From Styela clava (lineage: Eukaryota), in NCBI RefSeq assembly GCF_964204865.1, contig NC_135260.1:9610001-9674000 (forward strand): 64,000 bases of DNA. Direction: 5' to 3'. Below the pieces are notes generated by a model that worked only from the letters and a program-made list of their open reading frames with translations, ran no database searches and was not told the origin of the DNA. Position 1 is the stretch's first letter; every line of letters starts with the position of its first letter. Below are positions 21,401 through 45,400 of the stretch, one piece after another. The translations under genes were made by a program, and so were the position numbers.

Positions 21401-24400
21401 GAAGTCTTACGGTAAAATCGGCATTTTTTGGTTCATAATGCACCACCATTTATTCTATATAGTTTGAGTACCTCTCGGCGCTTGGGTTGTTTCTGTGAAT
21501 TTACTCAAAGCCGAGTCCCCTCTACTCCTGTGTGAGTGGAAATGATCTTGTTTTTAGCAAATTCTGTTACTAATATATGTATTCCGATAATTTTACTTCC
21601 TTTTTTGAGAATTTATTATTTTGTAGAACAGTAATTTTTTGGGAAATTTTTCATTCAAAATATCTTGATTAATTGGATTGAATTACTTGACAATAATTAT
21701 ACTCTGTTTTTACTTCATATATATTGCAATTTAAATTTGAATTTTTTGTTTTTAAGGTTAATATTAATAATTCGCAAGTGCAATATACATGTCTGTCAAT
21801 TCACATAACTGCTAAAGATAAGAATATAATCATTTCAACACAAGAAGAAAACTTTGAACATATGGGTATAATAAACAATTTTTATCTTTGGATTATCAGT
21901 TGTTCAAAAGTAAATTTTAATTGTTTTTCATGGTTAGACCAGACGTGAAAACGCTAAAATCTCACTCTTGCTTATACTGATGACTCGAGGTTGACAAAAA
22001 TTTTGACTCTTTGCTTTCATGCCGAGAAAAAAAATTTGAACCAAAAAGAGAAAAAATTTCAGACCTGGGGTGTTTGAAAATACAACTCCGACTCTAGTAC
22101 CAATAAAAAAAAGGCCAAACGCCGACTTCGGCTTCACAACCGCGGGCTCAGATCGGCCAGCCTATTGATTTTGCATATTACAAACTTAAGCAGCTTTCTG
22201 CATTCCTGCTTGTACAGTGACTTAGTCAGGGCAATGATCAAAAAATATAATGGATGCCTTTAGACAGCAACTTATATGGAAGTTAACGTGATCACTGTCT
22301 GTTGCAGTTTTTTAGGTTTAAAACTTTTTTTGTATAAGCTAATAAATCAATGCAATTAGAATTATGCTTCTTAACCTCAACACACCCTATTTTAGGGGTA
22401 AATATGTAAATATTTATGTTTGCACTATTTCACAAGGTAATGATTTTAAATTTTATCCCACAGGTCCAGGTGATATAGAAATTGGGAACGAATTGATTTC
22501 AGCATCTGCAGTCTTTCCAACAAAAAAATCAATTCATGAGTCACAATGGTATCATATTGTTGTTGTCATCAACAAAGCAACTGTCTTAAAACACAGTACT
22601 GCTGCAGCATATTTAAATGGAAGATTGCTTGGGACATCAAAGGTAAAGAAAATCTATTTTTCATACAGGCTAATTAATAAAGGCAAGGTTTTGAGCTGTT
22701 AATCAGTGTTGAGGATGCTCGAGTCTTTTGCTCTACTCGAGTTCAGCTTGAGTCTCCAGTTATCAAAAACTCAATATTGACTCGAGTAATCTAAATGGAA
22801 GGACTTGGATTCGTCAGCAACGAATCGCCAGTAACCTGACTCGATACTCTGATTTCCAGTGACTTGACTTTTCCACGGATTGAGGTTCTATTTCGGTGAT
22901 GATGGTTTCATTGAACCTCTGCAGTATATTGATTAGAAATAGAGGCCTTGTGCATAATTTTAGGATTTGCGGAGTTGATAACCAGTAACATTAAATAATG
23001 AATAAATATTTGGAGTCATGATTGATGACCAAACACACTTATCTTTAGAAAAGCATCCCGCACAGCGTTTAATATTGCCGTTTCCTTGCCACACAATCAG
23101 TCCCACATGTTGTAAACGAACAAAAGTAAACACCGAAATGCGAATTTTCACTACCTCACACAAATAACTATGAGGGATGTATTGTTTTCATTCATTCCCC
23201 TATTTTTTTCCTTCCTAGTTGAGATACATTCACACAAATCCAGGCGGAAATTCAGCTAATTCTGCAATCCAAGTTCGTGCATATGTGGGTACACCACCAA
23301 GACTCAGTGCTCGATCTCCTCTACTTTGGCGCCTTGCATCCTTCCACATCGCAGACGATTCGTCATTTGTAACAGCTTCAAGTGTAGCAACTCAATATCA
23401 ACTTGGACCATCCTACATTGGAAATTTTCAAGCTGTACCTCTGTCTGGTCAGTGTAAAAATATAACACTATTGGCTTTTTCCATCATACACATATCTGAA
23501 TAATTCAATATAGTTGCGTGATGCAAGATTCTGTTGGACAATTTTCTGAACACACGTTCGAAAAATTCTTACCTTGTCATTCAGTTTTGTTTTTCGTCAC
23601 ATTAAAAAATATTTATTGCAATGGTCTTAATGAAAATAGGCTTCAATTGTTCGAAAAGTACATAGCTACAGCCATATGGAATACAGTATCAATTTTCTTA
23701 ATAATTCCCGGGAATTTTACAATTTTTAAAATAGTTTTTTCACATTGTTCGTCGTCTGTAATGAGTTCTATTCTTGGAAACCTTTGACAATATCTAGTCT
23801 TATAGCAGGGGTAGTGAACCACTGACCCACGTGACCCCCGATTCATTCTGTGACCCACCAAGTTACGAATTGATACAAATAAACATACTAGAATTTCGTT
23901 GCTAAAAATTTTCAGATGGAGGTTTTGGACCAGTTTTATCAGAAGAACATCTATGTTTCTCATTACATCCACATGCATGTGAAACATCATCTGGCGCTAG
24001 AATTCGAAGACAATGCATGAAGTTTGACAGCAAATCTATTGCAAACGAGGTAGACTTTTGTAACTAATTACTTTCAAGTGTGAAATTACGATGTACTGGA
24101 TTTTGTCAAATTAAAAAATTGGACAGGCTAGGTAGTCCACAAGTCTAAAAAATTAATATTGTGTATTTCGATTCTAATATCTATATCAAATGATCCCAGA
24201 ATTTAACGTTTTTCTTAATTGTTTTTTCATTATTAGCATTATATAGTATATCTCATGGTTTCTTGGGCTGGGCCCTTGGTGCCTCCACAAGGCCACAAGC
24301 AAAGACCTTTATGGATACCACAAAGTTTTTTTTTTGATGATTTCATCAATTTAATGTAGATAAATTGTGATTTGTTAAATCTTTGGACTGTAGTGCATTT

Positions 24401-27400: not shown

Positions 27401-30400
27401 GTGTCCTAATTCTCAAATTGTGTATTTGTATTGATTTTGAATAGATAGTGGTATATCTCTCTGAGTAGATATGAAAAAAAATCCTACACTTTGTTTGATT
27501 TTTCGGATTTACCCAATTAAAGTAAAACTTTAGTAGGGATATGTCACTATTTACATATTCAGGTATGGCACAATGCTCCTGATGAACTACATCGATCACT
27601 GTTGGAACATATTTATGGACTTCTTACTGAATCAAGGTAATTAATATAAATACAGTATCATAAAGTGAACTACGGTAATTATATAAATAAACTCGAGATT
27701 CTAAACTACAGTTTATACCTCATAATTGAGTTTAAAATTTTAATCAAATAAAAATTTACTATTAAGCGCAAAATATTTGAAACCGCTATAATTTTTTTAT
27801 AGAAAAGCATCCTATTTTATCTAAAATTTTTGATGACTTTTTTGCGACAGATATTCTTTATGAAATAACTTTATTGTGTTGTGTGTTTCCATTGTTTCTT
27901 CTGTTTTAGTGACACAAATGAGAATTGCAAAATCATAAAAGAACGTGGAATGGTTAAACGTTGTCTTCATTTTGTGTTCGGAGATTCATCCCTCTCTTTA
28001 GGAACAATTCGTGCAATATTTCGAATCATTCAAGCATTGCTCAATACTTCCGGAAACCACTCAGATTTGCTTAGGTGGGTAACTTTTGTCGTCTAGTGTG
28101 GGCCAAGGTCTCCAAGTGGTTTTAAAACACTGATGCCATAAAATGACCCCATAACAATTTTTTTTATACTTGAAGCCATTAAGACATTTCACAATTTTTT
28201 ATTCTCGCTTTGAAAGTGTTGTTCACTCATATTATTATTTTGAAATATTCGAGCAGCTTCTATGGAAAAATTTTGAAAGTGTCCCAGCCTGACCCAGCTT
28301 TCTAACCAGGGGCCAAAAATTTTGCCCACCTATGCTGGCAGGCCGTCTGAGTGTCATGTAAAAAGTTACATTTTATGAACAACATTTACAGTGTTACAAA
28401 AGTAAAAGTGGAAAACAATAGGCCTCATGCCAAACCTATATTTAATTGCAATATCAACAAATTATTTTTTAGCTAAAACATCAAAATTTGGTTTTAGTTT
28501 GGTTGTGGCAGCATCAGGCGAGCCAGATTAATTCCCCTTCGGACAGAATTTGGCCCTCGGGTCGTGGTTTGCCCATGTTAGTTGTATAACCTTATCATCT
28601 TTACTAATTGCCCATTGCTATGGTTATAAATAAGGAGCGAAAATCTATTGTAATATTAAATAAGCTTTGTCCTTTGTAACATTTGTACAAAGCACATTTA
28701 TCATTAAATAGATTTGGTCAATTTCTTGTTTCAACTATTCCTCCTCTTGATGAGTATGAAACATCTATAGAGCTGAGTGAACCAGAGACTGATTTCAAGA
28801 AATGTACTCCAGTATCGACAAGTGCGGGTGAGTTAGTAATAAGCCTCTCAAAGCTATCATGAACCGTTTTTAGAGAGTGTCTCAAAATCGAGGCTGTGGA
28901 GTTGTAGTCGGGGTCGAGTCCTATTTTCAAACTACCAGGAGTCTGAGTCTTAAGTAGATATTTTAAATTCATAAAAATTTGAATTTTAGACATTTAATGT
29001 TGATAATTTGAAGTAAAAATATTTGAGTTGATTTAGTGAGACTTCTAAAAATGATAAAATATCGCGTACATGTATATTATATTGTTCATGTCAAAATGGC
29101 AATTTCTGTAGTTTTGCAGTTTTTCGTTATAAATGTTCTCTCGTAATATATGCTTGTTTCACTGTTGTGATAATTAGCGTCATTTTCATCAAACAAAATC
29201 AATTCTACAAGGATCAAACTTAAAAAAATAAATGACCTTTGTTAATTTCCAAGGTCATATCAAGAACAAACCATCTTATGCAGGCTTGCTTTCAAAATTC
29301 CGGCTCGCGGACACATTCCATGCGGCCCACAGAATAATTTTAGCATGCCCTGAATCATTGGCAATTGTTTGTATTTATTGGCAGAAAATTTTTGAATTAT
29401 TTTTAAACTATCCTTAAAAGTTATTGCGGCCCACCATCCTTGGACCACCCTGTCTTAATTCTTCACTTTACATTTGTAAATAAAATCTATACCATCCACT
29501 GGCAAAATTTGCAGAAATATTTTTACACGATAAATTATATAGTCAAATTTAATGAATATTTTCCTTAAAATGGATCTCGGAAAAATAATTCTTATACTTG
29601 CCATCGCAGAATTTTTGATGCTTTTTTCAAAAGTCTTTTCGTTAGTTGACACTTACAAACTGGTATTCATGTTTTATAACCATCATCTTGGTTCAAAATA
29701 TTAAACCTTGTGATGTTTTAAGTACTGCTAGCTAAGCTTAGCCTAGTCTAGCCAGCTTTATGGGGACTAATTTTTAATACTGCAACTGAGCTAATACTTC
29801 TTGGGGACAAAATGCCTATTGAATCAATGGCATAAAAACGACAAATGCATAGCTGTGACTAATATTTTATATTCACACTTAAAAATGTCCTTTTTGTGAT
29901 CGCTATATCTAAAATGGATTTATTTATTATGCCTGCCCTTTTGAAATAGCACTATACAGTCTCAACATTTCCCCCTCATCAGCACTGGTAAGTATCTCGA
30001 AAACGCATATTTTGCTGGCTTTACTTATTTATTTTATCAAATAGGATAATACTGAAATATTAACACATTTCACTGTGAACATTTTATTTAAATCGAATAT
30101 ACCCATTTTGGTTCTACATTCCTTTTGAGGAAGATTGCAGCTGTACTGTCTATAAATTTTGCCAACTTCACGTCAAGCATTGTTATTCCACCTTTATCAA
30201 ATGTGTAAAGACTCACTTCAACCTAAGAAAATAGGCAAGATATACAAAAGAAAACTTTTTTGGAAACCTTAATCATTACTTTTCTTTAGAATACAGAATT
30301 TCCTTCTTTAAATTTTTTTATTGGATATATAGTGTAATATTTGTTTCCTAAATTGAAGATAGAATCGTAAAAAAAACGCTTGTCAGAGTAAAATAATAGA

Positions 30401-33400
30401 TCCCTAATATTCCAAGATCACTAAATTTAGTTTATGTCAAGGATGTTTTGTCTTATTGAAATAGACATTGTTTTTCATAATTCAGCAAAACTGTTGTTCC
30501 ATACAAACCAAATTTAATGTCTGAGCAAATGTCACGATTTGAACTATATTTGTAAAATTGATGATTGCGTTTTTGTTAGAGATATCATCAATTTTCATGT
30601 TTTTAGCGTTAATTTTTTCAAACTAAAACAGGTTTGACGTACCGTCTTGTAGTTGTTCCTCCAGTCGGGATGGTGACAGACTGCCTCTGCTTTCAGTGCT
30701 ACTTTCGTCATGAAAGAAAATGCATCACCAAACTCTTCAAAAGTATATTTCTTGTGAAGCTTGGTTCCTTTTTTTATTGTTGCCCATCCTTCCTTTATCA
30801 GAGGTTCCAAAACTTCCTTCTTTTTTGTTGTCAGCTTTTCTGGCTGTTCAGATGGCAAACAATTGACGAGTGGGTCCATGGAATCCCTTTCAGAATATGA
30901 TACCCCAACACAAGTCATTATGACTAATGACAAAAGAGCAAGCCGTGCCATTGTCATTTCTTTGCAACTCAACTTCTTGATTAGAAATTCCACTTCAGCT
31001 TTCCTTATTTATAGCTAAATAGTGTGAATGTCGGGGAAATTTTTTTTGCTTCGCTTAGTGCCAAATTGTGTGCAAGTTGCATGAAAAAGAGATATTAGGC
31101 TTGAACTTTGAATAGTCTGCAAATGAAGCATTGTCTGACCTTTTTGTCCATGATTTTTGGGAAAATTAAGTAATACATCATAAAAAGACAGATTTGAGTC
31201 TGCTCATAACTAACTGTGAAATCAAATTTTAACATACCAGGGGTTGTGGTAGTGATGGAGATGACTTAATTTACGCCTATGCTATAATGCAGTGGTTCCC
31301 AAACTTTTTTCCGGGCGGCCCAAGGTCATGATAGAATACTAAACGGCATGTAGTACTTTTATGTCTGCTTAACATAGTGACTAATATAAAACAATCATTT
31401 TTACATGATATTTTTCGCCCGGAAATTACCTCAAAATGAAAAGGCGACGCTTGTTTGCCATCAGGGAGTTTTTGAAATGCTGGTGCGACTTTACTTTGCA
31501 AAATGAATGCTGCCAAGTTTTTACTCTGTGATACTTACGCATATACAATTACTATTGAGTAACACTTCAAAACCAGATATAAAATAAATAATAAAATGTA
31601 CTAGAAAATAAAATTAGTAACTTTTAGGTTTTTTGTTGAAAAACAAGCGACGCAAGAAAATTTGCAGACAACCCAGTTTTGGGTCGCGGCCCATAGCTTG
31701 GAAAACACTGCTATAATGAACCATGTTAACATGCCAAAATTTACTGCCCGATGCATGAACCATGTATCAGACAAAACAAAACCTGTCAACTGTTCTCAAG
31801 CCACACGAAACGTCAACGCAAGTTTCATACAATTTGTGTATATTTCTAGACTGATTATTATTGGTCTTCATTATCAAGGCAATAATCAATATACTATAAT
31901 TTGTTAATGTAATAATAAACAATGCAAACTTTTGATCGATTTTAAGATTGATGATCAAAGAGTAATATCACAAAATTTGTATAGTTCCTAACAAATATGT
32001 CTAACATTGATCACGATCTTATTTGGTACTTATTGATTAAAGTAAACTTCTATTACTGAATATTTTAATCGTCGATTGCAGAATCATGTTTTAAATCATC
32101 ACTGTGTTCGTTAATGATAGTTATATAACAAAAAAATTTAAGGTAAAATATTGGGCCGTACAAAACTTTAAATTTGAAATTCAAGAAAAAAATGTAAATC
32201 TGGGTCAACTTCTTTCATTTTTAATTTCTGAAAATTTGAAATCAATTGCTACATTAGTTGTGGAAAGAGTGTTTTTTACAAGCTAACAAAGCGATCCGTG
32301 AGTCCACTTCATGATCATTATATCTAAAAGGCTTATTTAAGACGGTTTATGCTGTCTTGCCTGTCCCTCTTAAAATAGCACTATTTAGTCTCAACAGTAC
32401 CCCCTCACCAGCACTGGTAAATATTTTCAAAATGAATATTCATTTGCTGGCATTATTCATTTATTTTGTCATGATGATACTGAAATATTAACATCAATAA
32501 AGCAGTTTGTGTACATGTTTAGGAATAATAAAAAAACTGTTTCTTTGTGTAATAAAATATCGAACTTATTAAAATTATGAAATATGACAACACATTTTCC
32601 TGTGAACATTTCATTTAAATCGAAGATATTCTCTTTGGCTCTACATTCCTTTTGAGAAAGATTACAGCTGCGTCGTCCATAAATTTTGCCAACTCCACGT
32701 CACTCATTGTTATTCCGCCTTTACCCCATGTGAAAAGAATCACTTCAACCTAGGAAAATAAGCAAGATATAAAAAAAATAAAACTTTTATAAAAATATTC
32801 ATCATTTTTTCCAATTAGCAATTATCCTATAAGTTCACTACTAAAATATATTACAGTCCCAGGACTCATGTATTTGTTGGTAAAATATGTTTTTTCTATA
32901 AAAATGATTAAATATTTTGATATTTTGAGTTACCTCATTAATTTATTTTTAGTACGGTAATCAAAGCAAATTACATAAACTCTGGGGAATTACTTTTCAA
33001 TAGGATACTGAATGAACTTGATTTTATTCTTTTTACTTGTGTGTAGTATTTTTAAATGAATAATTTGTAAAATTCACTCCTTAAATTTAAGAAAGATTAG
33101 TAAAAATGGTTATCGGAATAAAATTATAGATGTTTTCATGTTTTTGGGGTTAATTTTTCTAAAAAAAACAAGTTCAACATACCGTTTTGTAGGTATTCGT
33201 CCAGTTGGGATGGTGACAGACCGCTTCTGCTTTCAGTGCTACTTTCGTCATGAAAGAAAATGCATCAGCAAACTCTTCAAAAGTATATTTCTTGTGAAGC
33301 TTGGTTCCTTTTTCTATTGTTGCCCATCCTTCCTTTATCAGAGGTTCCAAAACTTCCTTCTTTTTTGTTGTCAGCTTTTCTGGCTGTTGAGATGGCAAAC

Positions 33401-36400
33401 AATTGACGAGTGGGTCCATGAAATCCCTTTCGGAATATGATACCCCAACACAAGTCACTATGACTAATGTAAAAAGAGCAAGCCGTGCCATTGTCATGAT
33501 TAGGAATTTCACTTCAGCTCCCCTTATTTATAGCTGAATATTGTGAAAATTTTATCTGCTTGGCATAGTGCCAAACTGTGTTCAAGTTACGTTGAAAAGT
33601 TATATATGGGGATTAAATTGTATGCAAATGAATCATTGACTGACCTTTTTGTCTATGATTTTTTTGCCAAAATAAGTAAAACATAAAAAGAATAATTTGA
33701 TTTATCAAGTACAATGATATTTGACATTTCATTATTAACAGACCGTTTGTCAAACAAGTAGGTGCTTTCTTTTTATTCCACTATTAATCAATTTAGCAAT
33801 GCTTTTATATATTGATTTTAGTAAACTTTTCCACTTTTTAACTTTAAACAAGATGACAATGCTTAAAAATATAAACGCAAAGATCAATTGACCTTTGGGA
33901 TGGATGGCAGCATTATTTTTTCCAAAATATGAAAAAATGGACGCTGTAGAAATTTGTGTACCAATATGGAGGTAACTAATTTTGTTGGCCTACTTTACAT
34001 CAAGTTGTGTAAAGGAACTGAAGCCTATGCGCAAGGGGGGTATATTGACTTGGCTAACACAGACAGTCCCCAAACTTGTAATAGAACTTGTAATAAGGAA
34101 AATCGGAATGAAATTATGGCCTAACTGTCAACAGGTTTTAACTCTCGACATTCTATCAACAGGTTTTATCTTATTTAAAACTCATTCAAGAAAACGTCTG
34201 ATTTCGTCTTATAAGCTTGGAAAACAATATCTTCCTACATTTCATTAGATTTCTTTGAATGTTTGTACTAGTTGCACAGGCCTTGTTTGTAGCCAAGGGC
34301 GAGAACTACAGCGTTGTTCTTATGCTTGTAGAAGAGTTGTTCTTCTCATACCTAGGGAGTCCCTAATACTGACCCTACGTACAAACAGTCATCATAGGTG
34401 AATTTATTGCAAGGTCCTCTTAACACATTTTACATTCATGTCATGAAATTTAACTTTAATAAATTATTTTCATTATTTATATTACATTACAAATAAATAA
34501 AAAAATGACCCAATAAAACGCTAGAGTTTGCTAGGCTTGCAAAAGTTGGATAAGTCTCATTATCTGTTTCTTTAAGGAAGAAACAATGCTGCTGCAACAT
34601 CAATAAACTTTGCCAACGCTACATCATTCATTGTTATTCCATCTTTGCTCCATGTGTAGAGTGTCACACTAACCTAAACAAAATTCATATTATGAAGAAG
34701 ATCTTTTTATGTCTGGGGGCCATGTGCAAAAACTTTCATCTGGTACCAATTCACAATTACTTCTTCAATTTAAAGAGGATTGACTGTGATTTATTCAATG
34801 TTCTATTTATTGTTTTGCTTTCATTTGTTGACTATTCAGAATTAAATGTGGTACATAAAATAACTGATGGAAAAATGGTATAAGCCAAAACTAGATATTT
34901 GTTTAGACGAATTTATGTAATCATTGTACATCGCACCTGATGAAGGTTTTTGTAACGGCCTCAGTGAGCTTATCTGTGGCTGCTTTGTGGGTTTCGAGGG
35001 CCCACTTTGAGAAACCTTGAACTAAAACAATGAAAAAACAACAATATACCCTTTTGTATAAGTTTTCTAACAAAGGATAGTGGCAGACTGAATTGACTTT
35101 TAATCCAACTTTGGTCATGAAGGCTGCAGCATCACCAAATTCTTTGAAATCAAGGTTTTTCCGTATTGCATTTCCATCGTTAACAAGAGTCCAACCGCTT
35201 TGTATCAGAGGTTTCAAAACCTTTCTTTCTTCTTTCGTCAACTTTTCTGGCCACACAAGTCCGTGGCAGTTTATTAACGGATCATGGGCATCTATTACAG
35301 AATAAGATGTACCAATGCATGACATGGTGACGCACAACAGTAACACGATTTTGACCATAGCCATTTTTTCTCCTCTGTTACCATTGGCTTACAAATTTTA
35401 ACGAACATTATTGTCTTTATATATAGTATCTTCATTCCGAATATAAAAAAATGAGATTTTTTTTCTGATTTAATGCATAAATTATTACCATGCACCATCA
35501 ATTATCCATACACTGCGTGACTAAATATTCTGGAAGTTCTCGTTTTTTAATTAAATATTCAGATTCGAGATATTTTTAGTTGGTAATATGACAGTAACTG
35601 AAACTTCTTCAGTAGTTTATTACCATACTTGTCAGAGTAGCATATATTCAACTTATTTTATCTTTGAACTTCCTGTTAAAGTGATTGGAATAAGTAATAA
35701 CGACGACGTCAACATGATCTATAACGATTTATAGCTAATGACCCTTTGTGTCAAAACACAATTATTCGACTAATGTTGATTACAAATTAGCATACGCTGT
35801 GTAGGCTTTTTCCAAGCTTTGATAATAACATGCAGCTTCTACTTTTTTGATGCAACTTTTATGTCACATCACCTCACAAGGAACTCCTACATGATAGCCG
35901 TCTAGTATAATTTACAAATGGTTTTCTTAATTGATATGGCAACGTATATAAAGAGCATCTTTTGTCATATTCTCTTTTCTCTTATTTTTCTCTGTTGTTC
36001 GGAATGATTTTTTTAGTTGCAGAATCCCTGTTTATACAGAGAATGTATTTGGCTTTACTCTGATTTAATGTTAAGGTGGTACTTTGTGCAAGTTTAAAAA
36101 TAATCATAATTCATTAAGTAAAATTTAATAGACAAAATATATTTTAGGACAATCAACTTGAATTTAAGGGAAATTATTGTATTTAATCAAATATTGAAAT
36201 AAAATGGAAAATAAGAATGGAAAATATAAGTGACGATACTTAATGTTTAATGAACCTTTAATAAATTAGTTTGACATGTCGAAATTGGGCGCTGCAGAAG
36301 TGTGTGTACCAAAATGGAGGTAACTAATTTTGTTCGCTACTTTGCATCAAGTTGTGTAAAGGGACGAAAGCTTATGGTCAGCGGGTATATTCAGTTGGTC

Positions 36401-39400
36401 TCCGAACTCATAATAGAACTGAAATAAGGAAAATCGGAGTAAAATTAGTGCCTAACCCTAACCTGGTACACATACTACGTTAGTACCAAATAGTTTACCA
36501 TGTCGAAATGGTATTTAATGAAAAAAAAACATTTTCATCATCGCAGGCAAGCAAATCATGTGTTAATTTGTTTAAATATCTTTTCAACGATACAAACAAA
36601 TTAACACAATAATTGCTTTCCGTTGCCAGTGAATTAGTATTTTTTTATCAAATTCAATTTCGAAGAAATGATGTATCTGCAAAACTATGAGTTCAATTTC
36701 TTTACATTTGTCTCGTTTCATTGGTTATTCAACAACCAAACTTTGACATAAATTACCATGATTATTTTTTTTACTAAAAATTTTCTGAGAAAATACCAAC
36801 ATGACTTTGAATTGATTCCAGATTCTTGCAGTCGAAATTTGCAGTTTTTGTAGATTTAATGAAATTTTGATTGTTTTGCAGACTATTTTCAAATCAATTA
36901 CCGGTGGCTCATTATTCATATTTGTTCTAATCATGTTTTGTAATAACATTTTTTTTTACAAAATTCATTTTATTATCTAAAATATTGATCTTTGCAAAGT
37001 TTGTTGCTTTTATATTCTACATCTATATCATTTTCAGGCCAAACGAGTATTTACATTTATTTGGTCTGCATCTATTTGACTGCCACCATTGATTTTTACC
37101 AATATAGTTCTTTCATCGAGTATTATATTGGATTTTTAACTTTTTTCCACATCTCCTTGGCATCTTGATACATTCTGTCCCCATCGCATTGTATCTATAT
37201 GGTGTTTTCCTGAATTCGGTTCTCAACTGTGTAACTTTGCGATTTTCAAAATACATGGTGACTATTTGCCATTTTGGAAATGAGTTTTACTGTGCTCTTT
37301 TTTTTTCTGGTATGGGAAATTATATTAATGAATTCTGTATCTGCCACTGGTTGGTATTAACAATGAATAAAATTGACTTGTTTAGGTATTAAATCAAGAA
37401 TAGTGAACCATTCACTTATGTTTTATTTTTTATTCCGTTTCCAATATTTCCAATTTGAATTCCAGATCCAACAAGAATGAACAACAATGTATGTGAAAGA
37501 ACAATACATATGAGAAACATGGGAATCAAGTTGTTGAGAGAATGTTTGTATGAAGATGCGTCTGGCAAACCAAATATAACGTAGGTTCTACTGGTATTTC
37601 TATATATCTAAAAATCTGTTCGTGTTCTTACTATTTTTGTTATCCTGAAGGTTTTTCCTATTTTAATTCAAATTGAATGTCTACATCTCGTTACTAATCT
37701 TCAAATCATTTGCATGCACATCAATGCAGAATAATTATTTTTTAGAAAAGCACACCATCTTTCATGTAACCTTGTATTTCTAAAATAAATCTATCCATTA
37801 TTTTATAAGATAATTGTACGGGAAAACTGTACCATCTAGTTCAGGGGTCGGGAACCTTTTTGGTCAAGAGAGCCATAAAATATACATATTTTCAATTGCA
37901 TTTCCGTGCGAGCCATATAACATTTCTTCACTTAATCAGGCCTGAAATGTTTATTCAAAAGTCAACACATACAATGTCAATATACATTTAATGTGATTTC
38001 TGATGCTGCATGTAGTCGCTGCGGGCCTTGAACGGTTGGTTGCTCACATGCAGCCCAAGTTAAAATCTACGATACTCATCACCCTTTTTTCTTAGGCATC
38101 TCCGTAGTGTTTTTAAAACTCACAATGTCACAATATATGTGATGTCACAATATATGTTCCAAAATCCCCTTGTTTGTCACAATGCCTGTCTGGTAATTAT
38201 CTTACATAACATAGCCATGTGCTGGAGGCGCGTTCTCAAACGCATTGGGAATTTCCTGCCAAATTTGGCTATAAAAGAGTTTGAAATTTTGTAACAATAG
38301 TAAGCTTAGTCTTGGGATATTAGATTTTTCTGGGAGCCATATGCCGTCACCAAAAGAGCCATATATGGCTCGCGAGCCATGGGTTCCCGACACCTGATCT
38401 AGTTCATGCTTATCCCAGAAAAAAAAACAGTTGCCATGAAATAAATTTAATGCGAATCATCAGATTTTCTAGGCAAAATAGGAAATTTATATTTGGCATG
38501 TCAAAGATATGTTTTTTTGTATTAGGCTGTTTGCTTAAAACATGGCTCTGTGCAAGGAAGCATTTATTGTCTGAGGAAATACAAATTCTGCATGAGCCAG
38601 CTTCTCTATTTAGCTATCGGCTTTATTAGCTTTATCATTAATATTTTATTTTATAGGTTCTGTGAGGATATTCAACGAACGTTAGGATGGGATTGGATGC
38701 TGCTATTCATGCAGGAGAATATTCATTCTTCTACTGTGGTTGAAATCACACTTCTGCTATTGGAAACACTAAGGTATTACTAATAGTGTCAGATACTTCA
38801 ATTTCATTTATCATGTTTTATGAACCACTGGAAAATTTGAGAATGTTGAATAAATTGACCAGAAAAATCTGCGTAAATCTTCACAAAATCATAGCAATTG
38901 AATTTAGTGCTACAAAGATATGAACTGTTTTATTAATTTTCTCTTTATATGTAGAGTTAAATTGATGTTATTTTTGGTTTATCTGTCAAATTTTGAAATG
39001 AATATAATTTTAAACTATATTTTAAATCAAGAATTTGCTGCATTGAATGCAACCAATTTCGAATGTGTTCATATTCTCACAATTCCTAATTTACTACACA
39101 TTTTATATAGCCCACACTGAAACGATCAGTGTATGTCCAAAAGAATTCAAATTGATTCAAAATTAATTATATTGGATATTTCAAATTCTTGATTTCGGGA
39201 ATATCTCAAATAAAGCTTAGAATATACATAGACTACTTTGTTGAACATAAACATATCCGATATTCCATATTGATAATATTATTTTAGAAAGTTTTCGAAA
39301 TAGAAAATTACATCGCCATCTCTGGCAATTGAAAAACATTGTTTATAATGTATTTTCCCCGGCTATAGAGTCGCTTTTCTGTACCTATTTTTATGGCCTG

Positions 39401-42400
39401 GTTTTGGTGGGGCCTTATTAGGCGGTTACCAGCTATGCTCATTTTATTTTTTCTGGTGTCGACTTTTTTGCATGGGTCTTTTCAAACCTGATTTGTGTTA
39501 ACTTTATGTCTGGGTTAATATATTTTATAATGTATTCGAGGCCAAAGTAGCCATACGATGAAGCACTCCTTATTTATGCCCGATATTAGTACCCTTCAAA
39601 AAGAAAACGGTTACCACGAGATATAGAGATTGATTTATGAAACTTTGGTTTTGCCATTTCAGGTAAAAACGGCACTATACTGGAAAACACAGATATTGAA
39701 ACACAGCTAATCCTATGAAATTATGAGGGCATATTAGTTATATTTATCGTATTATATTCATTTCAGATGTGGTTCCACTGGATTCAAGTATTCCCATCAT
39801 TCCTCGTCAGTTTCAAGCTCATCATTGTCATCTGCTGCTTTATCCACTTCTTCCTCTCTAGTCGGAGCAGCTGGTGTTGCAGTAACTGGTATCAGTTCAA
39901 ATTCAACATCTTATAACACGGCTTATGAAAGATTTAAATACGGTGAACTTTGTGGAGGATGGCTGGATGGCACTGAAGCTATTCTGGAGAGCAGTGCAGA
40001 CTCATTACTTGGTAGGTTTTAATGAAAAGGGTAATTGTAGTTGAAGACTATATTTTGAAATGAAAAAGATAAAGTATGGATAACCAACCATCCACAGACA
40101 TAAAAGCTTAAGCAACTTGAAAATTCCAGATATTGTGTTTCGAAACTTGTCGTATTAATTATTGCACTGCGTCAAATATTGCACTTTGTCCGGAAAATGT
40201 TTCGAGGACTTTACAACGAAAGACCAGATATTGAAATTTGCAAAAAAAATATTTGAAACTGTTCAAAAAGTGCACTTTAAGCCGGTTAAGTTTAAATCGA
40301 AAATATGTGTTTTTCTCATCTTTTCAAAAAAGATTTTTCAAATTTTACTTTTTCGACTGAAGTAATCAAATTTTGTACTAAAAAAGGGCTTATTCTAAAT
40401 AAAGTAGGTAATAATAAACTTCTGAGTTGGTACTATTTTTAATGCCTCTAGGATTAGCTGCTCGTTCGAGTCTCTATTTGGAGCTGAAGTTTAAAAAATA
40501 TCACCCTTTGATTAACAAAATAATATTGTTACCTGTTATTTTACATCTTTTCATAAATTAATTTCTAGGTTTCAATGTTGGTTCTGCTTCAGACAAACCA
40601 TATCATCGACAAGTTTGTAGAGAATCTTGTTCTATTGCTGGATTTTCTGCTCTCGCTACATATCTTCTACGGCACATGAATTCACCAAGATTGTATATTG
40701 CTTTGTTACAATTCGCTGTCTCTGATAAACTCAGTGACCCACCTGACTTGAAACAGGTAATAATAAATGATTTTGTTGGAATTATTAAAGTGGTAAGTCG
40801 AGAAGACCGTTACAACCTATGAATCATATACTCTTGCCAGTTAGTCTCCAGTATGGTATTGGTCAGTCAATTCAATTTGTTCTAAACTAAAGTCTAGATA
40901 ATTATTTATCTAGGCAAACTTCATTTGGTTTGTCATTTTTTGAGGAAATAAAATTATCTCCCTTTTTCTATATTTGAAATTTCATTGATAGTAGTAATTT
41001 AGTACTTTATTTTGCTTCGTGAATGATAACTTATACTTTATTAAATGATTAATTAAAACCTATTGTTTTTACATAACATTCATTTCTCCGATATTACCTT
41101 GTTTGCCATCAGCGAGTTTTTGAAATCATCGAGTGGCTTTAAGCGAAATAGATGCGTCCAATTTTTTGATCTTTGGTACATCCTATTTACTACTGAGCAA
41201 CTCTTCAATACTACATATAACATAAACAATAAACTCTACTAGAAAGGTTTTTGTTGAAAAAACAAGCGACCCAAGAAAAGTTTCATCCTAGTTTTGGGTC
41301 ACGTTTTATAGGTTGGGAAATTCTGCCTTTGAGTGGGCAAGTTTGAGAAACTATGTTATAAGTCTGTTCCCTGAACCCAAACTTGACTTGATATTCGCTA
41401 AAATAATTGTTTCCAGATTGATTTGGACACCATGTATGAATATATATTTGGTTTGAATGCAAATGCTGGAGGACCTGCAAGTCCTCGATCTAAATTGAAG
41501 CCAAGTTCTAGTTTTACTGGAATTTCCCAATCAAATCAAGCATCGGTGGCAATGAGTCTCGAAATCTTTCAAGTTATCTTGTCCATGGTCAGATCCATGA
41601 TAAATCAGGTATTTATCCTTATGCATATTTTTTCTGTATTTTTTTTTAAAACGACGCTTATTCACGCCATTCACTCTGAACAAAGCCTCGTAAAAGCAGC
41701 AACTGGTAGCTAATGTTGTTTTCCTTCGAAATACAGAGTGACCCAGAATGAATAGAACCCAGGTCATTTGGAACATATTCTAGAGCAGGGGTGTGCAAAA
41801 TGTTTCGTTGGTAGGCCATAAAACCACCTTACCTGCTGAGTCACACAAAAAATTTAGTGAGAATGCGACTATTGCCTAACCATACAGTAATAAATGCATC
41901 GGGCAATGTGGCGAAAGATATAACGTAAAGACAAGAGCAAAAAAATCATTTATTTTTATACATGCGAGTGCCTCTTCAAACATAAATTGTCGAGTTAGGA
42001 TTTTATACTAGAGTTGGAGTATTGACGAGGGCCAGTCATTAGCAGCTTAGATTTCTGAAACGTTTGGGTACAAACAAAAATAGGAATCGGAAGACGTCAG
42101 ATGTGAAATGAATTATTGATTACATTCAATTATAATATATATATTAAATTCCTAATTTTTGAACTACTATAATTCTAAATTTAAAATAGCTTCATTTTGA
42201 AATCTGTCATTTTGATTCTTTAGCATTGAATATCTGAAGGTTAAATTAAAACTCAAGATTTCACTTATTATCTGATGTTTGATTAATAGAACATTTATCT
42301 CAACTTTTCTAACTAACCGAATTCATTTTTGAATGCTTAAAAGTTTTTGTCATCAAAAATTGCCTATCATGGAGTTCAGAGCTGGATTCGAAATTTTTCT

Positions 42401-45400
42401 TATTCGGGAGTCAAAGGTCAATTTTCTATGACCTCCACAGCCCGAAACAATAAATCAGCAAGGTTATGGCAGAAAGGAATGTGAATGTTTTGGTCTGATT
42501 ACTTTACCAGACCCTTGTAATCATTGTGATATTACTTGTTGTTACTTAGTAAATATTACTTGTTCACATGTTTGTGTAAGAGTGCTAGTTTGGTGATAGT
42601 GCATTATAGTTTGTAACTGGCCTGGATAAATAATCTATATATGTTTATCTTCCTTGAGGGCAAACAAACTTTTCAGGAGTGATTATTTTAAATGATTGTA
42701 CTTTTTTTTTTCAGAAATGGCAGAATGAACCATCAACCTCATGGCTACAGACTTATCCAATTGTTATGCTTCAAACATTGATATTTATTTATCAATTCAA
42801 TTACAATTCTTTGGCATCAGTATTTGTATCTCATGATTTCATATCTTATCTTTGTGCAACTATCTTTCCAACCGAAGATAACACTTTTTATGTAAGTTTT
42901 ATTATTCAATGTATCTTTGTTCGTAAATTAAATAAAGCGAATATTTTTATTGAACATTTTTCATGATAAAATTACAACATGTGAGCCACTCATTGAAAGT
43001 GCTTTGTCTTCCCTGTGTTAAGATAAGTATCAGCTTTTAAGTCTTCTCAAAGTTTTATGATCCGTTACCTCATTGCTTTTAACATTTTTTCTTCAGTTAT
43101 ATCATGTGTCATATGTAATATAAAGAAGCAAATGAACAAAACTAAAAAATAAATGCATTATGTCAAAAAGAATCAAACAAATCACAGTCGATTCACTTTA
43201 AATTATTGTAGTCATTGTGAATTGAACCTAGTGGCCCAAACCCCTCTCCCTCACTTATGGCCTTCTAGGACGAAGTTTCATAAACCCTGTTTTCATGTTC
43301 TAGATTATTTTCAAATTCCTGTTTAATTCATTTCACAGATGGTTCCATATTTTTCTATCTCTGGAACAAACAGCAAAACTGCTACATCCAGCGTTCCGAC
43401 TACTCCGAACGAAGAAAACCCCAACAATATCCCTGCATCATTCACTTCTGATACTCTTAACAAGGAAAGTCTACTTTCTACCCATCCATGCAAAAAGTTT
43501 ATCTTCAGTCTCATTCAGCATATTATATTTGATTCGTTATCACTGCCATCAACATCGTCAAATTCAGGGAAGCATGCACAAGTTATTGATATCATACTAG
43601 AGGTGGGTTGTAATTTTATCATACTCAAATTATGAATATGTGGACTCATGTTGAGACAATACTTTTTTCTAAACTTATGTTTCTAACTACGAAAAAATGC
43701 GATGTATAATACAGAAAAATGCTTTTTTTTACATTTTAAAATCGGGTCTTCCAACCTGCTAAACCACCCCCCCTGGGTACGCACTGGACTTCACTAATTC
43801 AACGCTGTTTCAAGTCTTGCGTCACTTTGCGTTTGTTGCCGCTTAACGCACTCACTATCTGTGTTTATCCATAAGTTTGCTCAGAATAAGTCTTTCTTGC
43901 GTTAGATTTGTTTCATTGGGATGAAAGAAATACAAGTGTTTTCTTGTTATTTAAACTAATTTGAACTAATGTTTTATTCATTTAATGCTAAATAAACTCT
44001 TCTATCTATTCCTATTTATCAACATTTCCCTTTTTTGTACAATAATTAGAAATTAACAATGTCAAACAAAAATTTTAACATATTGTAGTAGTCAAAATTC
44101 CAATAAAAGTTACCTGATTTAATACGAAGATAAGTGGCATCGAGCTAACTGAATAAACTGACTTTATATTTCTGTCTTCAGATACATTATTAAATCAAAT
44201 ATATTCAATCCTAATGTTTCTCACATACACAAAAATTTTATTTCAAAATAGCCAGGCAGATTTTTTATACAATGCTTCAAAATTTTTTGCTCCAAACAAG
44301 ACCATGTGCATGCAGCTACTGATATCTACCAATATTTAATCCAACCTTTCGTATATCTCAGCACACTATTGAGCTCTTTAAATATTTGCGGCTCACCTAT
44401 CACAAAACATGAACATTTTCTACTCATGAAGCCATTTTGCTATAAAATAACAAAAAACAAATGAGATCTAATAATCTTTGTCTATATTTAAACACATGTT
44501 GTTTCTGCCTTACAAAATTATCATTTCCAAAAAGTGCGATAGTTGATCCCGAATTTTTTTTTTGTAGTTACCGATATTATAACTGTTTTCTTACAATAAT
44601 GTACATGAGAGCGCCTTCGTTTTGATGGCCCTTCCCCGTTCCACAAAGCGCCCTTATTATTATCAAAGGTATTCTCATTTTGGTGGTTTAATTTATCATT
44701 GATATAATTTGTCACTCAGAAATGAATTGTTTTCAAACGATAAACCGTCTAATAATGAATCACTATCAATTTAAAACAACTTTGCTCATCAATTTATATC
44801 CAATTTTTTTCAGTTTTCACCAGAACGATGCACAACATCGCAACTAAAGGAGTTTCAAACAGACATCATAAACCATCTTTTTTCCAATCTTATTGCTGCT
44901 GAACCGTTCTTGGGAGAAACCGGTGTTCTTTTGACCCATGGAAACCTCTCGCATACCGGGAATGCAAATACTAAAAAAGGAAATTCAAATGTAGGAGCAG
45001 CATATGATAATATTCAACAAAATGTCGCTTACTTTGCTTCAAGAGTTGTGGACAGAGTATGGTTAGGTGAGTAAGATAACATAATAATTCAATTATAATG
45101 ACTGTAATGCTTTTGTAATATTATAACCCAATATTGCTGAGGTCGTCAAGCAGAGATGTCCAAAATCTCTTTTCGGAAAACATTCTTGGTTATTGTTCTG
45201 AATATACTGTAATATTGGTCATATTTAGCGATTAAATTTGCAGAAATTTTTGTATATTTTCATAAATAAAAATTGCTAATGCAGTTTAGTTTTAGATCAG
45301 TGGATCTCAAATCTTCATGATCCATGGCCCCCTTTTAAAGATTCAACACCTAGTTTCAACGAATTTCAATCAGTTATTTTATGTCTCGCGTTTAATATCA

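What the first reader, a model, noticed from the sequence alone, without database searches (positions are those of the whole stretch)
30190..35100. Catalytic histidine triad remodelled: probable pseudo-enzymes with an aromatic pocket residue
Established: PCD activity depends on the DHHP motif histidines and a third His in the L.TH motif (His62/63/80 in human PCBD1 numbering). Seen: the third His is Phe in copy 1 (YTFDK) and Trp in copies 2 and 3 (FTWGK, YTWSK). Copy 3 also changes HH to HY and loses the following W (CHYPLL). Fold residues are retained and the ORFs are intact. Inference: dehydratase activity is lost or altered and the cleft is repurposed for stacking on an aromatic ligand.
Basis: partly seen in the sequence, partly recalled or inferred. 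Interest (0 to 1): 0.75.

Follow-up and report, generated by a model that had tools for sequence, protein, structure and literature searches.

The report
Secreted pterin-dehydratase-like gene trio
A sea-squirt genome carries three neighbouring, transcribed copies of a pterin-recycling enzyme gene that have gained an export signal and lost part of the catalytic site, so they probably do a new, still unknown job outside the cytoplasm.

Summary
Three tandem two-exon genes on the minus strand (30088-35364) encode PCD/DCoH-fold proteins (Pfam PF01329). The third catalytic His is Phe in copy 1 and Trp in copies 2 and 3, in gap-free alignments to solved PCDs. Copy 3 also has HH>HY, W>L and E>N. NCBI names for identical proteins place the window in Styela clava.

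All three copies carry a signal-peptide-like leader and exactly two conserved cysteines. They share the intron position of the canonical, leaderless PCBD gene 1.77 Mb away. The old paralogue pairs show dN/dS of 0.15-0.19, and RNA-like contigs show spliced transcripts. They are therefore maintained, exported paralogues, not decaying genes.

Loss of dehydratase activity is likely for copy 3 and open for the Trp forms. The PCD signature as I recall it accepts His or Trp, and copy 2 fits it. The Phe exon was absent from four RNA-like runs and from an older annotation, so it may be one haplotype's allele.

Two wider patterns emerged. Leader-bearing PCD-fold proteins without the third His recur in other lineages. 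Bacterial Trp-type domains are mostly fused to TIR domains. Aromatic stacking was not tested because no model coordinates were available.

Another first-stage note of this scan (s1-819796) covers this same stretch.

The parts
30643..30957 (-). Copy 1, exon 1 (CDS from the first ATG). Encodes the leader (30957-30892), an N-terminal arm with Cys33, and the PCD fold up to ...CHHPDWRNNYKT.
   Evidence: Sequence. Pfam PF01329 at 52.8 bits. RNA-like contig covers 30640-30957.
30223..30642 (-). Copy 1 intron (GT..AG, phase 0).
   Evidence: Same position as the intron of the canonical PCBD gene.
30088..30222 (-). Copy 1, exon 2 including the stop: VEVSLYTFDKGG... The Phe codon TTT at 30201-30199 replaces the third catalytic His.
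   Evidence: NCBI model P0002. Depth 0 in 4 RNA-like runs. Single copy in the assembly.
33183..33497 (-). Copy 2, exon 1: leader (33497-33432), Cys33, ...CHHPNWTNTYKT.
   Evidence: Pfam 53.9 bits. Contig covers 33204-33497. P0001 is 100% identical.
32750..33182 (-). Copy 2 intron (GT..AG, phase 0).
32615..32749 (-). Copy 2, exon 2 including the stop: VEVILFTWGKGG... The Trp codon TGG at 32728-32726 replaces the third His.
   Evidence: Contigs cover 32586-32748, and a spliced joint ends at 32747.
35050..35364 (-). Copy 3, exon 1: leader (35364-35299), Cys33, ...NSVCHYPLLENLYKR. Here E>N, the second His>Tyr, and Trp>Leu.
   Evidence: Pfam 36.6 bits. Contigs cover 35098-35369, 35029-35247 and 35000-35344.
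34674..35049 (-). Copy 3 intron (GT..AG, phase 0).
   Evidence: Two contigs run 21-50 nt into it.
34572..34673 (-). Copy 3, exon 2 including the stop: VSVTLYTWSKDG... The Trp codon is TGG at 34652-34650.
   Evidence: P0007, a 138-aa near-identical protein, confirms the splice. Contig covers 34464-34620.
31006..31013 (-). TATAAATA upstream of copy 1. The same box lies at 33525-33532 upstream of copy 2.
   Evidence: Read directly. Promoter function not tested.

Best explanation
The three genes are lineage-restricted tandem duplicates of the animal PCBD/DCoH gene that have been redirected into the secretory pathway.

Each gained an N-terminal signal-peptide-like leader. Each also gained a short N-terminal arm with a cysteine, and a second cysteine placed directly before the HH motif. 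This is probably one disulfide.

The third catalytic His became aromatic, and copy 3 lost three more signature residues. The fold and the cleft are kept under purifying selection.

The most likely working model is an exported PCD-fold protein that no longer recycles tetrahydrobiopterin. It would use the remodelled cleft to bind a small ligand, or to turn over a different one slowly. The cleft is lined by His-His-Trp plus Phe/Trp in copies 1 and 2, and by His-Tyr-Leu plus Trp in copy 3.

Shown here: homology, fold, residue changes, leader, cysteine conservation, constraint and spliced transcripts. Inferred: export, the disulfide, loss of pterin recycling and ligand binding.
For: - Family and fold.
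- Residue equivalence.
- Origin. The canonical leaderless PCBD (DHHPEW...LSTHD) lies on the same contig, 1.77 Mb away, with the intron at the same codon boundary. The six Styela proteins form one clade with SH-aLRT 98.
- Leader. The hydrophobic core scores 2.66-2.95 on Kyte-Doolittle over 10 residues, followed by S-Y-S. Mature proteins have exactly two Cys, at positions 33 and 94, in all copies.
- Constraint. dN/dS is 0.19 for copies 1-3 and 0.15 for copies 2-3, with saturated dS. It is 0.63 for the young pair 1-2. Exon 1 is about 95% identical between copies 1 and 2, while most of the intron does not align.
- Transcription. Contigs of 4 runs from 3 studies cover exons of all three copies. Contigs in 2 runs carry an exon 1-exon 2 joint at the predicted splice sites.
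- No obvious partner. The genome has only three aromatic amino acid hydroxylase loci.
- Curated thresholds. All three copies score below the cut-offs of all 5 NCBIfam PCD equivalogs.
- Precedents. Of 7 non-Styela rows without the third His, 4 have a hydrophobic leader and a fifth is borderline. Among His-type rows, 13 of 128 have one. The leaderless nearest kin of leader-bearing P0056 keep His in 116 of 119.
Against: - Copy 2 and the older-annotation proteins P0003-P0005 satisfy the recalled PCD signature, which allows Trp. Dehydratase activity may therefore persist.
- No signal-peptide predictor was available, so the leader call is heuristic.
- The Cys33-Cys94 distance could not be measured. 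Residues 31-40 have mean pLDDT of only 74-79.
- dN/dS of 0.63 between copies 1 and 2 rests on 11 synonymous and 26 non-synonymous differences. It fits relaxed as well as diversifying evolution.
- The RNA label of the runs is a guess. Low-depth contigs also cover intronic and intergenic DNA.
- No ligand is known.
- The leader-versus-His association rests on a crude score. The independent-pairs test had too few pairs to reach significance.
Confidence: 0.6

Rival explanations
1. The Trp-type proteins (copy 2 and the Trp alleles of copy 1) are still working pterin-4a-carbinolamine dehydratases. They have simply been relocated to the secretory pathway or the outside, perhaps to serve a pterin-dependent oxidation there.
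For: - P0001, P0003, P0004 and P0005 match the recalled PCD signature in full.
- The first two His, Glu, Pro, Tyr and Asp are kept.
- A secreted biopterin-dependent hydroxylase exists in Toxoplasma (PMC2653193, passage read).
Against: - The genome has only the three usual hydroxylase loci and no extra copy.
- Scores fall below all 5 NCBIfam equivalog cut-offs.
- In bacteria, 70 of 83 Trp-type proteins of 200 aa or more are TIR fusions. None of the 120 loci has a hydroxylase iron-site motif within 8 kb. Trp there does not mark the metabolic enzyme.
- Copy 1 (Phe) and copy 3 fail the signature.
Confidence: 0.2
2. The cleft is dead and filled by the aromatic side chain. The proteins would then act through their surfaces as binding partners of other proteins, as DCoH does with HNF1 and as the inactive PCD-like RAF2/acRAF do with Rubisco.
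For: - The PCD fold is a known protein-binding scaffold. Foldseek hits include the DCoH-HNF1 complex 1f93 and the Rubisco assembly factor 4low (E 2.6e-3, TM 0.78).
- Copy 3 has lost four cleft residues yet is conserved.
Against: - The first His, Pro, Asn, Tyr and Asp of the cleft are still kept in all three copies. That would be unexpected for a dead pocket.
- No partner is suggested by any data here.
Confidence: 0.15
3. The copies are decaying duplicates or annotation artefacts without function.
For: - dN/dS is 0.63 for the young pair.
- The Phe exon was unseen in RNA-like contigs.
- Two contigs of copy 3 run into its intron.
Against: - Reading frames and GT..AG sites are intact in all three copies.
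- dN/dS is 0.15-0.19 across a saturated synonymous distance.
- The Cys pair and the fold core are conserved.
- Spliced contigs occur in 2 runs, and the models are confident.
Confidence: 0.04

Closest known systems
Animal PCBD1/PCBD2 (PCD/DCoH), including the canonical Styela gene at G000:C14:7869541-7870769
   Same: - Pfam family, fold and length of the core.
- Intron position.
- 35-38% identity to solved DCoH chains and up to about 50% to library PCDs.
- The first His, Pro, Asn, Tyr and Asp of the cleft are retained.
   Different: - A signal-peptide-like leader and an 18-residue arm are added.
- Two new conserved Cys.
- The third His is replaced. Copy 3 also loses the second His, the Trp and the Glu.
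- Arranged as a tandem triplet.
Inactive PCD-like proteins of plastids and carboxysomes (plant type 2 PCD/RAF2, acRAF; PDB 4low)
   Same: A PCD fold that has lost catalytic residues and been reused for another role. PMC5972614 (passage read) states that type 2 lacks PCD activity.
   Different: - Only a distant structural match (TM 0.78, 23% identity).
- Organellar rather than secretory, and of different origin.
- The Styela copies keep most of the cleft.
Psyllid salivary PCBD-like candidate effector (Diaphorina citri; PMC12695838, passages read)
   Same: An animal PCBD-like protein treated as secreted. It was cloned 'without signal peptide' for expression in planta.
   Different: - An insect protein with no shown kinship to the Styela cluster.
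- Its catalytic residues are unknown to me. The sequence is in supplements, which I could not see.
Bacterial Trp-type PCD domains fused to TIR domains (loci L006-L125)
   Same: They have HHP.W.N...TW(D/E), with Trp aligned to the third His.
   Different: - Cytoplasmic C-terminal modules of TIR proteins, about 290 aa long (70 of 83).
- 37-40% identity to P0001.
- The Styela Trp arose separately, inside the animal lineage.

Membership tests
PCD/DCoH fold family (Pfam PF01329, COG2154) | Profile match above Pfam's gathering score | tested here: met
   Exon 1 translations score 52.8, 53.9 and 36.6 bits against a cut-off of 26. Exon 2 continues the profile at positions 65-89/90.
PCD/DCoH fold family (Pfam PF01329, COG2154) | Alpha/beta fold superposable on solved DCoH/PCD | tested here: met
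   P0001 model against 1f93, 3hxa and 1dch: TM 0.89-0.94 normalised to the target, rmsd 1.2-1.7 A. The copy 3 model has the same secondary-structure elements and pLDDT 86.3. It was not fold-searched.
   The third His is F, W and W. Copy 3 also has Tyr for the second His.
Catalytically competent PCD (EC 4.2.1.96) | Published activity signature [EDKH]-x3-H-[HN]-[PCS]-x(5,6)-[YWF]-x9-[HW]-x(8,15)-D. Recalled from Naponelli et al. 2008; the paper is not held. | tested here: inconclusive
   Copy 2 (P0001) and P0003-5 match. Copy 1 (P0002, Phe) and copy 3 (P0007) do not. The signature itself could not be checked against its source.
Catalytically competent PCD (EC 4.2.1.96) | Score above the curated equivalog cut-off (NCBIfam NF002016-NF002020) | tested here: not met
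   Best scores are 99.5, 102.6 and 75.8 bits against a cut-off of 108 for NF002018. All five models are missed. These are bacterial models, so the result carries little weight.
Catalytically competent PCD (EC 4.2.1.96) | Dehydratase activity on 4a-hydroxytetrahydropterin | not testable with these tools
   Needs an enzyme assay or phhA/phhB complementation.
DCoH, nuclear cofactor of HNF1 | Cytoplasmic or nuclear location and an HNF1-binding helical face | not tested
   The leader argues against a nuclear role. Interface residues were not compared.
Secreted protein | N-terminal signal peptide (positive n-region, hydrophobic core, small residues at -3 and -1) | tested here: met
   Heuristic only. 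The leaders are MTMAR/LALFTLVIVTCVGV/SYS and MAMVK/I(V/A)LLLCVTMSCIGT/SYS. The Kyte-Doolittle 10-residue maximum is 2.66-2.95. No SignalP was available.
Secreted protein | Even number of conserved cysteines in the mature chain | tested here: met
   Exactly two Cys, at positions 33 and 94, in P0001, P0005 and P0007. Their geometry was not measurable.

The most novel reading that the evidence does not exclude
Exported PCD-fold proteins may form a recurrent class that I found described nowhere. Whenever this small pterin-binding fold gains an export leader, the third catalytic His is replaced. This is seen in the tunicate cluster and in at least three other lineages:
- the P0056/P0096/P0074 group, with F/F/Y;
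- P0073, with F;
- P0034, with N.
The four-domain P0006 (Asp at that position), which was not scored, may add a further case.

That would point to a shared extracytoplasmic job. One possibility is binding or scavenging oxidised pterins, purines or catechol-type aromatics. In Styela it would be backed by a disulfide that ties an N-terminal arm to the rim of the cleft.
Probability: 0.25. Interest if true: 0.7.

Novelty: new variant of a known kind. Interest (0 to 1): 0.5.

Why it matters
PCD/DCoH is a textbook moonlighting protein: an enzyme that is also a transcription cofactor. Plants and carboxysomes supply one well-known catalytically dead offshoot.

An expressed, constrained and apparently secreted triplet in a chordate relative would be a third kind of reuse of this fold. 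The parallel cases seen in unnamed sequences suggest the change is repeatable rather than a one-off.

It also warns against the automatic label 'putative pterin-4-alpha-carbinolamine dehydratase' now attached to these proteins. The question is directly testable with small, easily expressed proteins.

Tried and rejected
- Literature on the catalytic residues and the signature. Naponelli 2008 (PMC2287330 and its DOI), Wheatley 2014 (PMC3953307) and Wang 2006 (PMC2719813) are not held. Full-text searches for the signature and for His61/His79 mutagenesis gave nothing usable. These points therefore rest on recall.
- Prior description. The search for 'Styela clava' with 'carbinolamine dehydratase' found 0 papers. 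In the search for ascidian or tunicate terms with PCBD1 or DCoH, none of the 10 listed papers (of 76 found) held PCBD1 or DCoH. The search for 'carbinolamine dehydratase' with 'signal peptide' and 'secreted' found 13 papers. I read passages in two of them, the psyllid and Toxoplasma papers. Supplements were closed or not seen, so the psyllid sequence could not be checked.
- P0010, a 6954-aa protein with '18 stretches', looked like a giant PCD repeat protein. A profile built from A1 gives it a score of 2.7, so it is a compositional false hit.
- Cys33-Cys94 distance and pocket geometry. Structure prediction returns no coordinates, and none appear in /data. Not tested.
- Expansion of, or a leader on, the aromatic amino acid hydroxylases. 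Only three loci were found, and their N-termini were not examined.
- Leader versus His loss on a tree. Non-His needs 6 changes on the 141-row tree. Only 1 independent pair lies on supported branches, so no valid sign test is possible. The tree has 94 columns and is poorly resolved.
- Named kin of the leader-bearing look-alikes. The named relatives of P0034 that I read (four aphid proteins) are ordinary His-type with presequences. The named relatives of P0056 are leaderless alphaproteobacterial PCDs. The look-alikes themselves carry no names.
- The high-depth element at 33948-34125 is neither an Rfam family nor a tRNA.
- The protein atlas gave only generic PCD clusters, with scores of 0.85-0.87.
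- Host gene. One + strand ORF (22364-22702) gives a sub-threshold Laminin_G_3 hit. Seven other ORFs give nothing. The 'WDFY3 intron' reading of earlier notes was not verified.


Full report
WHAT IS THERE. The window is AT-rich eukaryotic DNA with sparse ORFs. Between 30088 and 35364 the minus strand carries three tandem genes of two exons each. The exons are joined by GT..AG introns of 420, 433 and 376 nt in phase 0. Exon 1 translations hit Pfam PF01329 (Pterin_4a) at 52.8, 53.9 and 36.6 bits against a cut-off of 26, and end at profile position 63/64. Exon 2 translations start at profile position 65. The two exons therefore abut exactly in the family profile.

A 149-aa protein in the public collection, P0001, is 100% identical to copy 2 exon 1 and equals my two-exon model. 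NCBI names it 'putative pterin-4-alpha-carbinolamine dehydratase [Styela clava]'. P0002 is the same for copy 1, with a later start codon. P0007 is a near-identical copy 3. I searched the spliced models exon by exon and did not join them myself. Whole-protein work used these database proteins.

In gap-free phmmer alignments to solved structures, the Phe of copy 1 lies over the third His of DCoH2 (1ru0/4wil, E 0.003-0.004). The Trp of copy 2 lies over the third His of Toxoplasma PCD (2v6u, E 0.015). Copy 3 reads CHYPLL, as reported, and also has Asn at the Glu/Asp position.

In alignment A1 (141 rows, 135 of them not from Styela), the third position is His in 128 of 135. The second His is His in 135 of 135. 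The Trp after Pro is Trp in 134 of 135. The acidic position is E/D in 134 of 135. Fold-core columns are kept, except A87G and A90V in copy 3. AlphaFold2 models of P0001 and P0007 have mean pLDDT 83.4 and 86.3, with the core above 90. The P0001 model superposes on DCoH and PCD structures at TM 0.89-0.94 and rmsd 1.2-1.7 A.

All three proteins start with a signal-peptide-like leader. It has a short positive n-region and a 14-residue uncharged hydrophobic core, followed by S-Y-S. The Kyte-Doolittle maximum is 2.66-2.95. Behind it lies an arm of about 18 residues that canonical PCDs lack.

The mature chains hold exactly two cysteines, at the same two positions in all copies. One is in the arm (position 33). 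The other sits directly before the HH motif (position 94), where other family members mostly have Asp or Asn. Conservation is confirmed here, but the disulfide is inferred, because no coordinates were available.

ORIGIN. The same genome has one further PF01329 gene, 1.77 Mb away on the same contig. It has DHHPEW...LSTHD, no leader, and an intron at the same codon boundary. The six Styela leader-bearing proteins form one clade with SH-aLRT 98. An exhaustive phmmer search of 1.84 billion representatives gave 3475 hits at E<=1e-3 but only 4 at E<=1e-30. Two of those four are the Styela clusters P0001 and P0007. The other two, P0006 and P0008, are unrelated multi-domain proteins. I therefore found no orthologue outside this species, although only the best 150 hits could be inspected.

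CONSTRAINT AND EXPRESSION. Nei-Gojobori counts were taken per exon and summed.
- Copies 1-3: dN/dS is 0.19.
- Copies 2-3: dN/dS is 0.15, and synonymous sites are saturated in both of these old pairs.
- Copies 1-2: dN/dS is 0.63, from 11 synonymous and 26 non-synonymous differences.
Between copies 1 and 2, exon 1 is about 95% identical, while the middle of the intron does not align. Exon 2 has three times the synonymous distance of exon 1 (0.25 against 0.077).

Four runs from three studies, guessed to be RNA and kept as contigs, hold 7-20% of the region's words. When laid on the region, their contigs cover exon 1 of all three copies. They also cover exon 2 of copy 2 and the 3' part of copy 3's exon 2. 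Contigs in two runs carry a joint between 30641 and 32747, with 3 ambiguous letters. That is copy-1-type exon 1 spliced at the predicted sites to a Trp-type exon 2.

This order is not collinear with the window. The contig differs from the window by 9 and 12 letters on the two sides of the joint. Two of its differences, at 30881 and 32695, recreate residues of the older-annotation protein P0005 (my reading). So the contig is an allele or paralogue of another individual, not a back-splice.

Against my reading, the following also hold. The RNA label is a guess. Low-depth contigs also cover intronic and intergenic DNA. Two copy 3 contigs run 21-50 nt into its intron. No copy 3 joint was among the rows shown.

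THE PHE FORM IS THE WEAKEST PART. The Phe exon (30088-30222) had depth 0 in all four runs. It is absent from the three older-annotation proteins, which all have Trp. It is single-copy in this assembly, with the copy 2 exon as its only relative at 85% identity. It may be one haplotype's allele or a poorly expressed exon. Contigs show presence, not absence.

IS THE ENZYME DEAD? This cannot be settled by computation.

For loss of activity:
- The catalytic triad is incomplete in all copies.
- Copy 3 lacks four cleft residues and fails the PCD signature.
- All three copies fall below the cut-offs of the five NCBIfam PCD equivalogs.
- The leader removes the proteins from the cytosol, where the three ordinary aromatic amino acid hydroxylases presumably work. 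Only three such loci exist.

Against loss:
- The signature proposed by Naponelli et al. 2008, as I recall it, allows His or Trp at this position. Copy 2 and P0003-P0005 match it completely. I saw that paper only as a citation. It is not held.

To test what Trp means elsewhere, I scanned one genome per bacterial and archaeal species for HHP.W.N.[YWF]-x9-W-[DE].
All 120 are in-frame PCD motifs.
- Of the 83 ORFs of 200 aa or more, 83 hit Pterin_4a, 70 also hit TIR_2, 4 hit EAD11 and 1 hit CHAT.
- None of the 120 loci holds the hydroxylase iron-site motif within its 8 kb.
In that sample, Trp marks a domain of signalling or conflict-type fusion proteins, not the metabolic enzyme. This weakens the 'still an enzyme' reading without excluding it. 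The other 37 ORFs are shorter, and some may be stand-alone.

A WIDER PATTERN. Among the 141 rows of A1, the third His is missing in 13, six of them from Styela.
- Of the seven non-Styela rows, P0034 (Asn), P0056, P0073 and P0096 (Phe) carry a hydrophobic leader. P0074 (Tyr) is borderline at 1.92.
- P0042 and P0114 (Phe) have no leader.
- Among His-type rows, 13 of 128 pass the same crude leader test.
The nearest retrievable kin of P0056 are leaderless proteins of about 97 aa, and the named ones are alphaproteobacterial. These kin keep His in 116 of 119. The tree needs 6 changes of the His state, but it is too poorly resolved for a valid paired test. P0006 is a leader-bearing, membrane-anchored protein with four PCD domains, all with Asp at this position. 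One paper treats a psyllid PCBD-like protein as a secreted candidate effector (PMC12695838, passages read). I could not see its sequence.

VERDICT. The sequence facts are right. The best reading is a lineage-restricted triplet of exported, constrained PCBD paralogues with a remodelled cleft. Copy 3 is almost certainly not a dehydratase. The Trp forms are undecided. Aromatic stacking is untested. The proteins are annotated in NCBI only by family name, and I found no paper on them. I rate this a new variant of a known kind, of moderate interest.

Noticed in passing
L006-L125 (bacterial genome records): Trp-type PCD domains (HHP.W.N...TWD) are mostly C-terminal modules of TIR-domain proteins of about 290 aa. 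Of 83 ORFs of 200 aa or more, 70 hit TIR_2, 4 hit EAD11 and 1 hits CHAT. No hydroxylase motif lies within 8 kb in 0 of 120 loci. I do not know of a description of this fusion, and I did not search the literature for it.
   Followed up: partly
window 33948-34125; also 73-235, 809-982, 1818-1968, 36282-36456, 50825-51014: An interspersed repeat of about 180 nt, with copies 80-90% identical. Its summed contig depth is about 50,000-100,000 in all four RNA-like runs. It is not an Rfam family or a tRNA. It looks like a SINE/MITE-type element.
   Followed up: partly
window 30641 joined to 32747: Contigs in two runs join copy-1-type exon 1 to a Trp-type exon 2. This is not collinear with the assembly but matches older-annotation proteins P0004 and P0005. 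It suggests allelic or copy-number differences between individuals in this cluster.
   Followed up: partly
window 35000-35049: Two contigs covering copy 3 exon 1 continue 21-50 nt into the intron. The unspliced frame stays open to 34921, giving a 147-aa ORF. This could be intron retention, pre-mRNA or DNA in the runs.
   Followed up: no
G000:C14:7869541-7870769 (L001, L005): The canonical leaderless PCBD gene (DHHPEW...LSTHD) lies on the same contig, 1.77 Mb away. Its intron is at the same codon boundary as in the cluster.
   Followed up: yes
window 33206-33198 (copy 2, residues 98-100): Copy 2 alone has an N-glycosylation sequon, N-W-T, directly after HHP at the rim of the cleft. P0007 has N-V-T at residue 107, where the window's copy 3 reads S-V-T.
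   Followed up: no
P0006, P0008, P0009 (unnamed library proteins): Leader-bearing proteins with two to four tandem PCD domains. P0006 and P0009 also end in a C-terminal hydrophobic segment. P0006 has Asp at the third-His position in all four domains.
   Followed up: no
window 2013-2336, 9484-9792, 12268-12645, 22364-22702, 41423-41713, 43339-43635, 58053-58460, 62116-62613 (+ strand): Long + strand ORFs lie on both sides of the cluster. This fits a large host gene whose intron holds the cluster in antisense, as earlier notes say (WDFY3-like). Only one ORF gave a hit, and it is sub-threshold (Laminin_G_3, 27.0 bits against 27.6).
   Followed up: partly
P0011 second domain; P0154: A bacterial fusion protein has a domain reading HYP...TW, the same HH>HY plus Trp combination as Styela copy 3. 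The two-domain protein P0154 pairs a 'FTH' domain with a 'YTF' domain.
   Followed up: no
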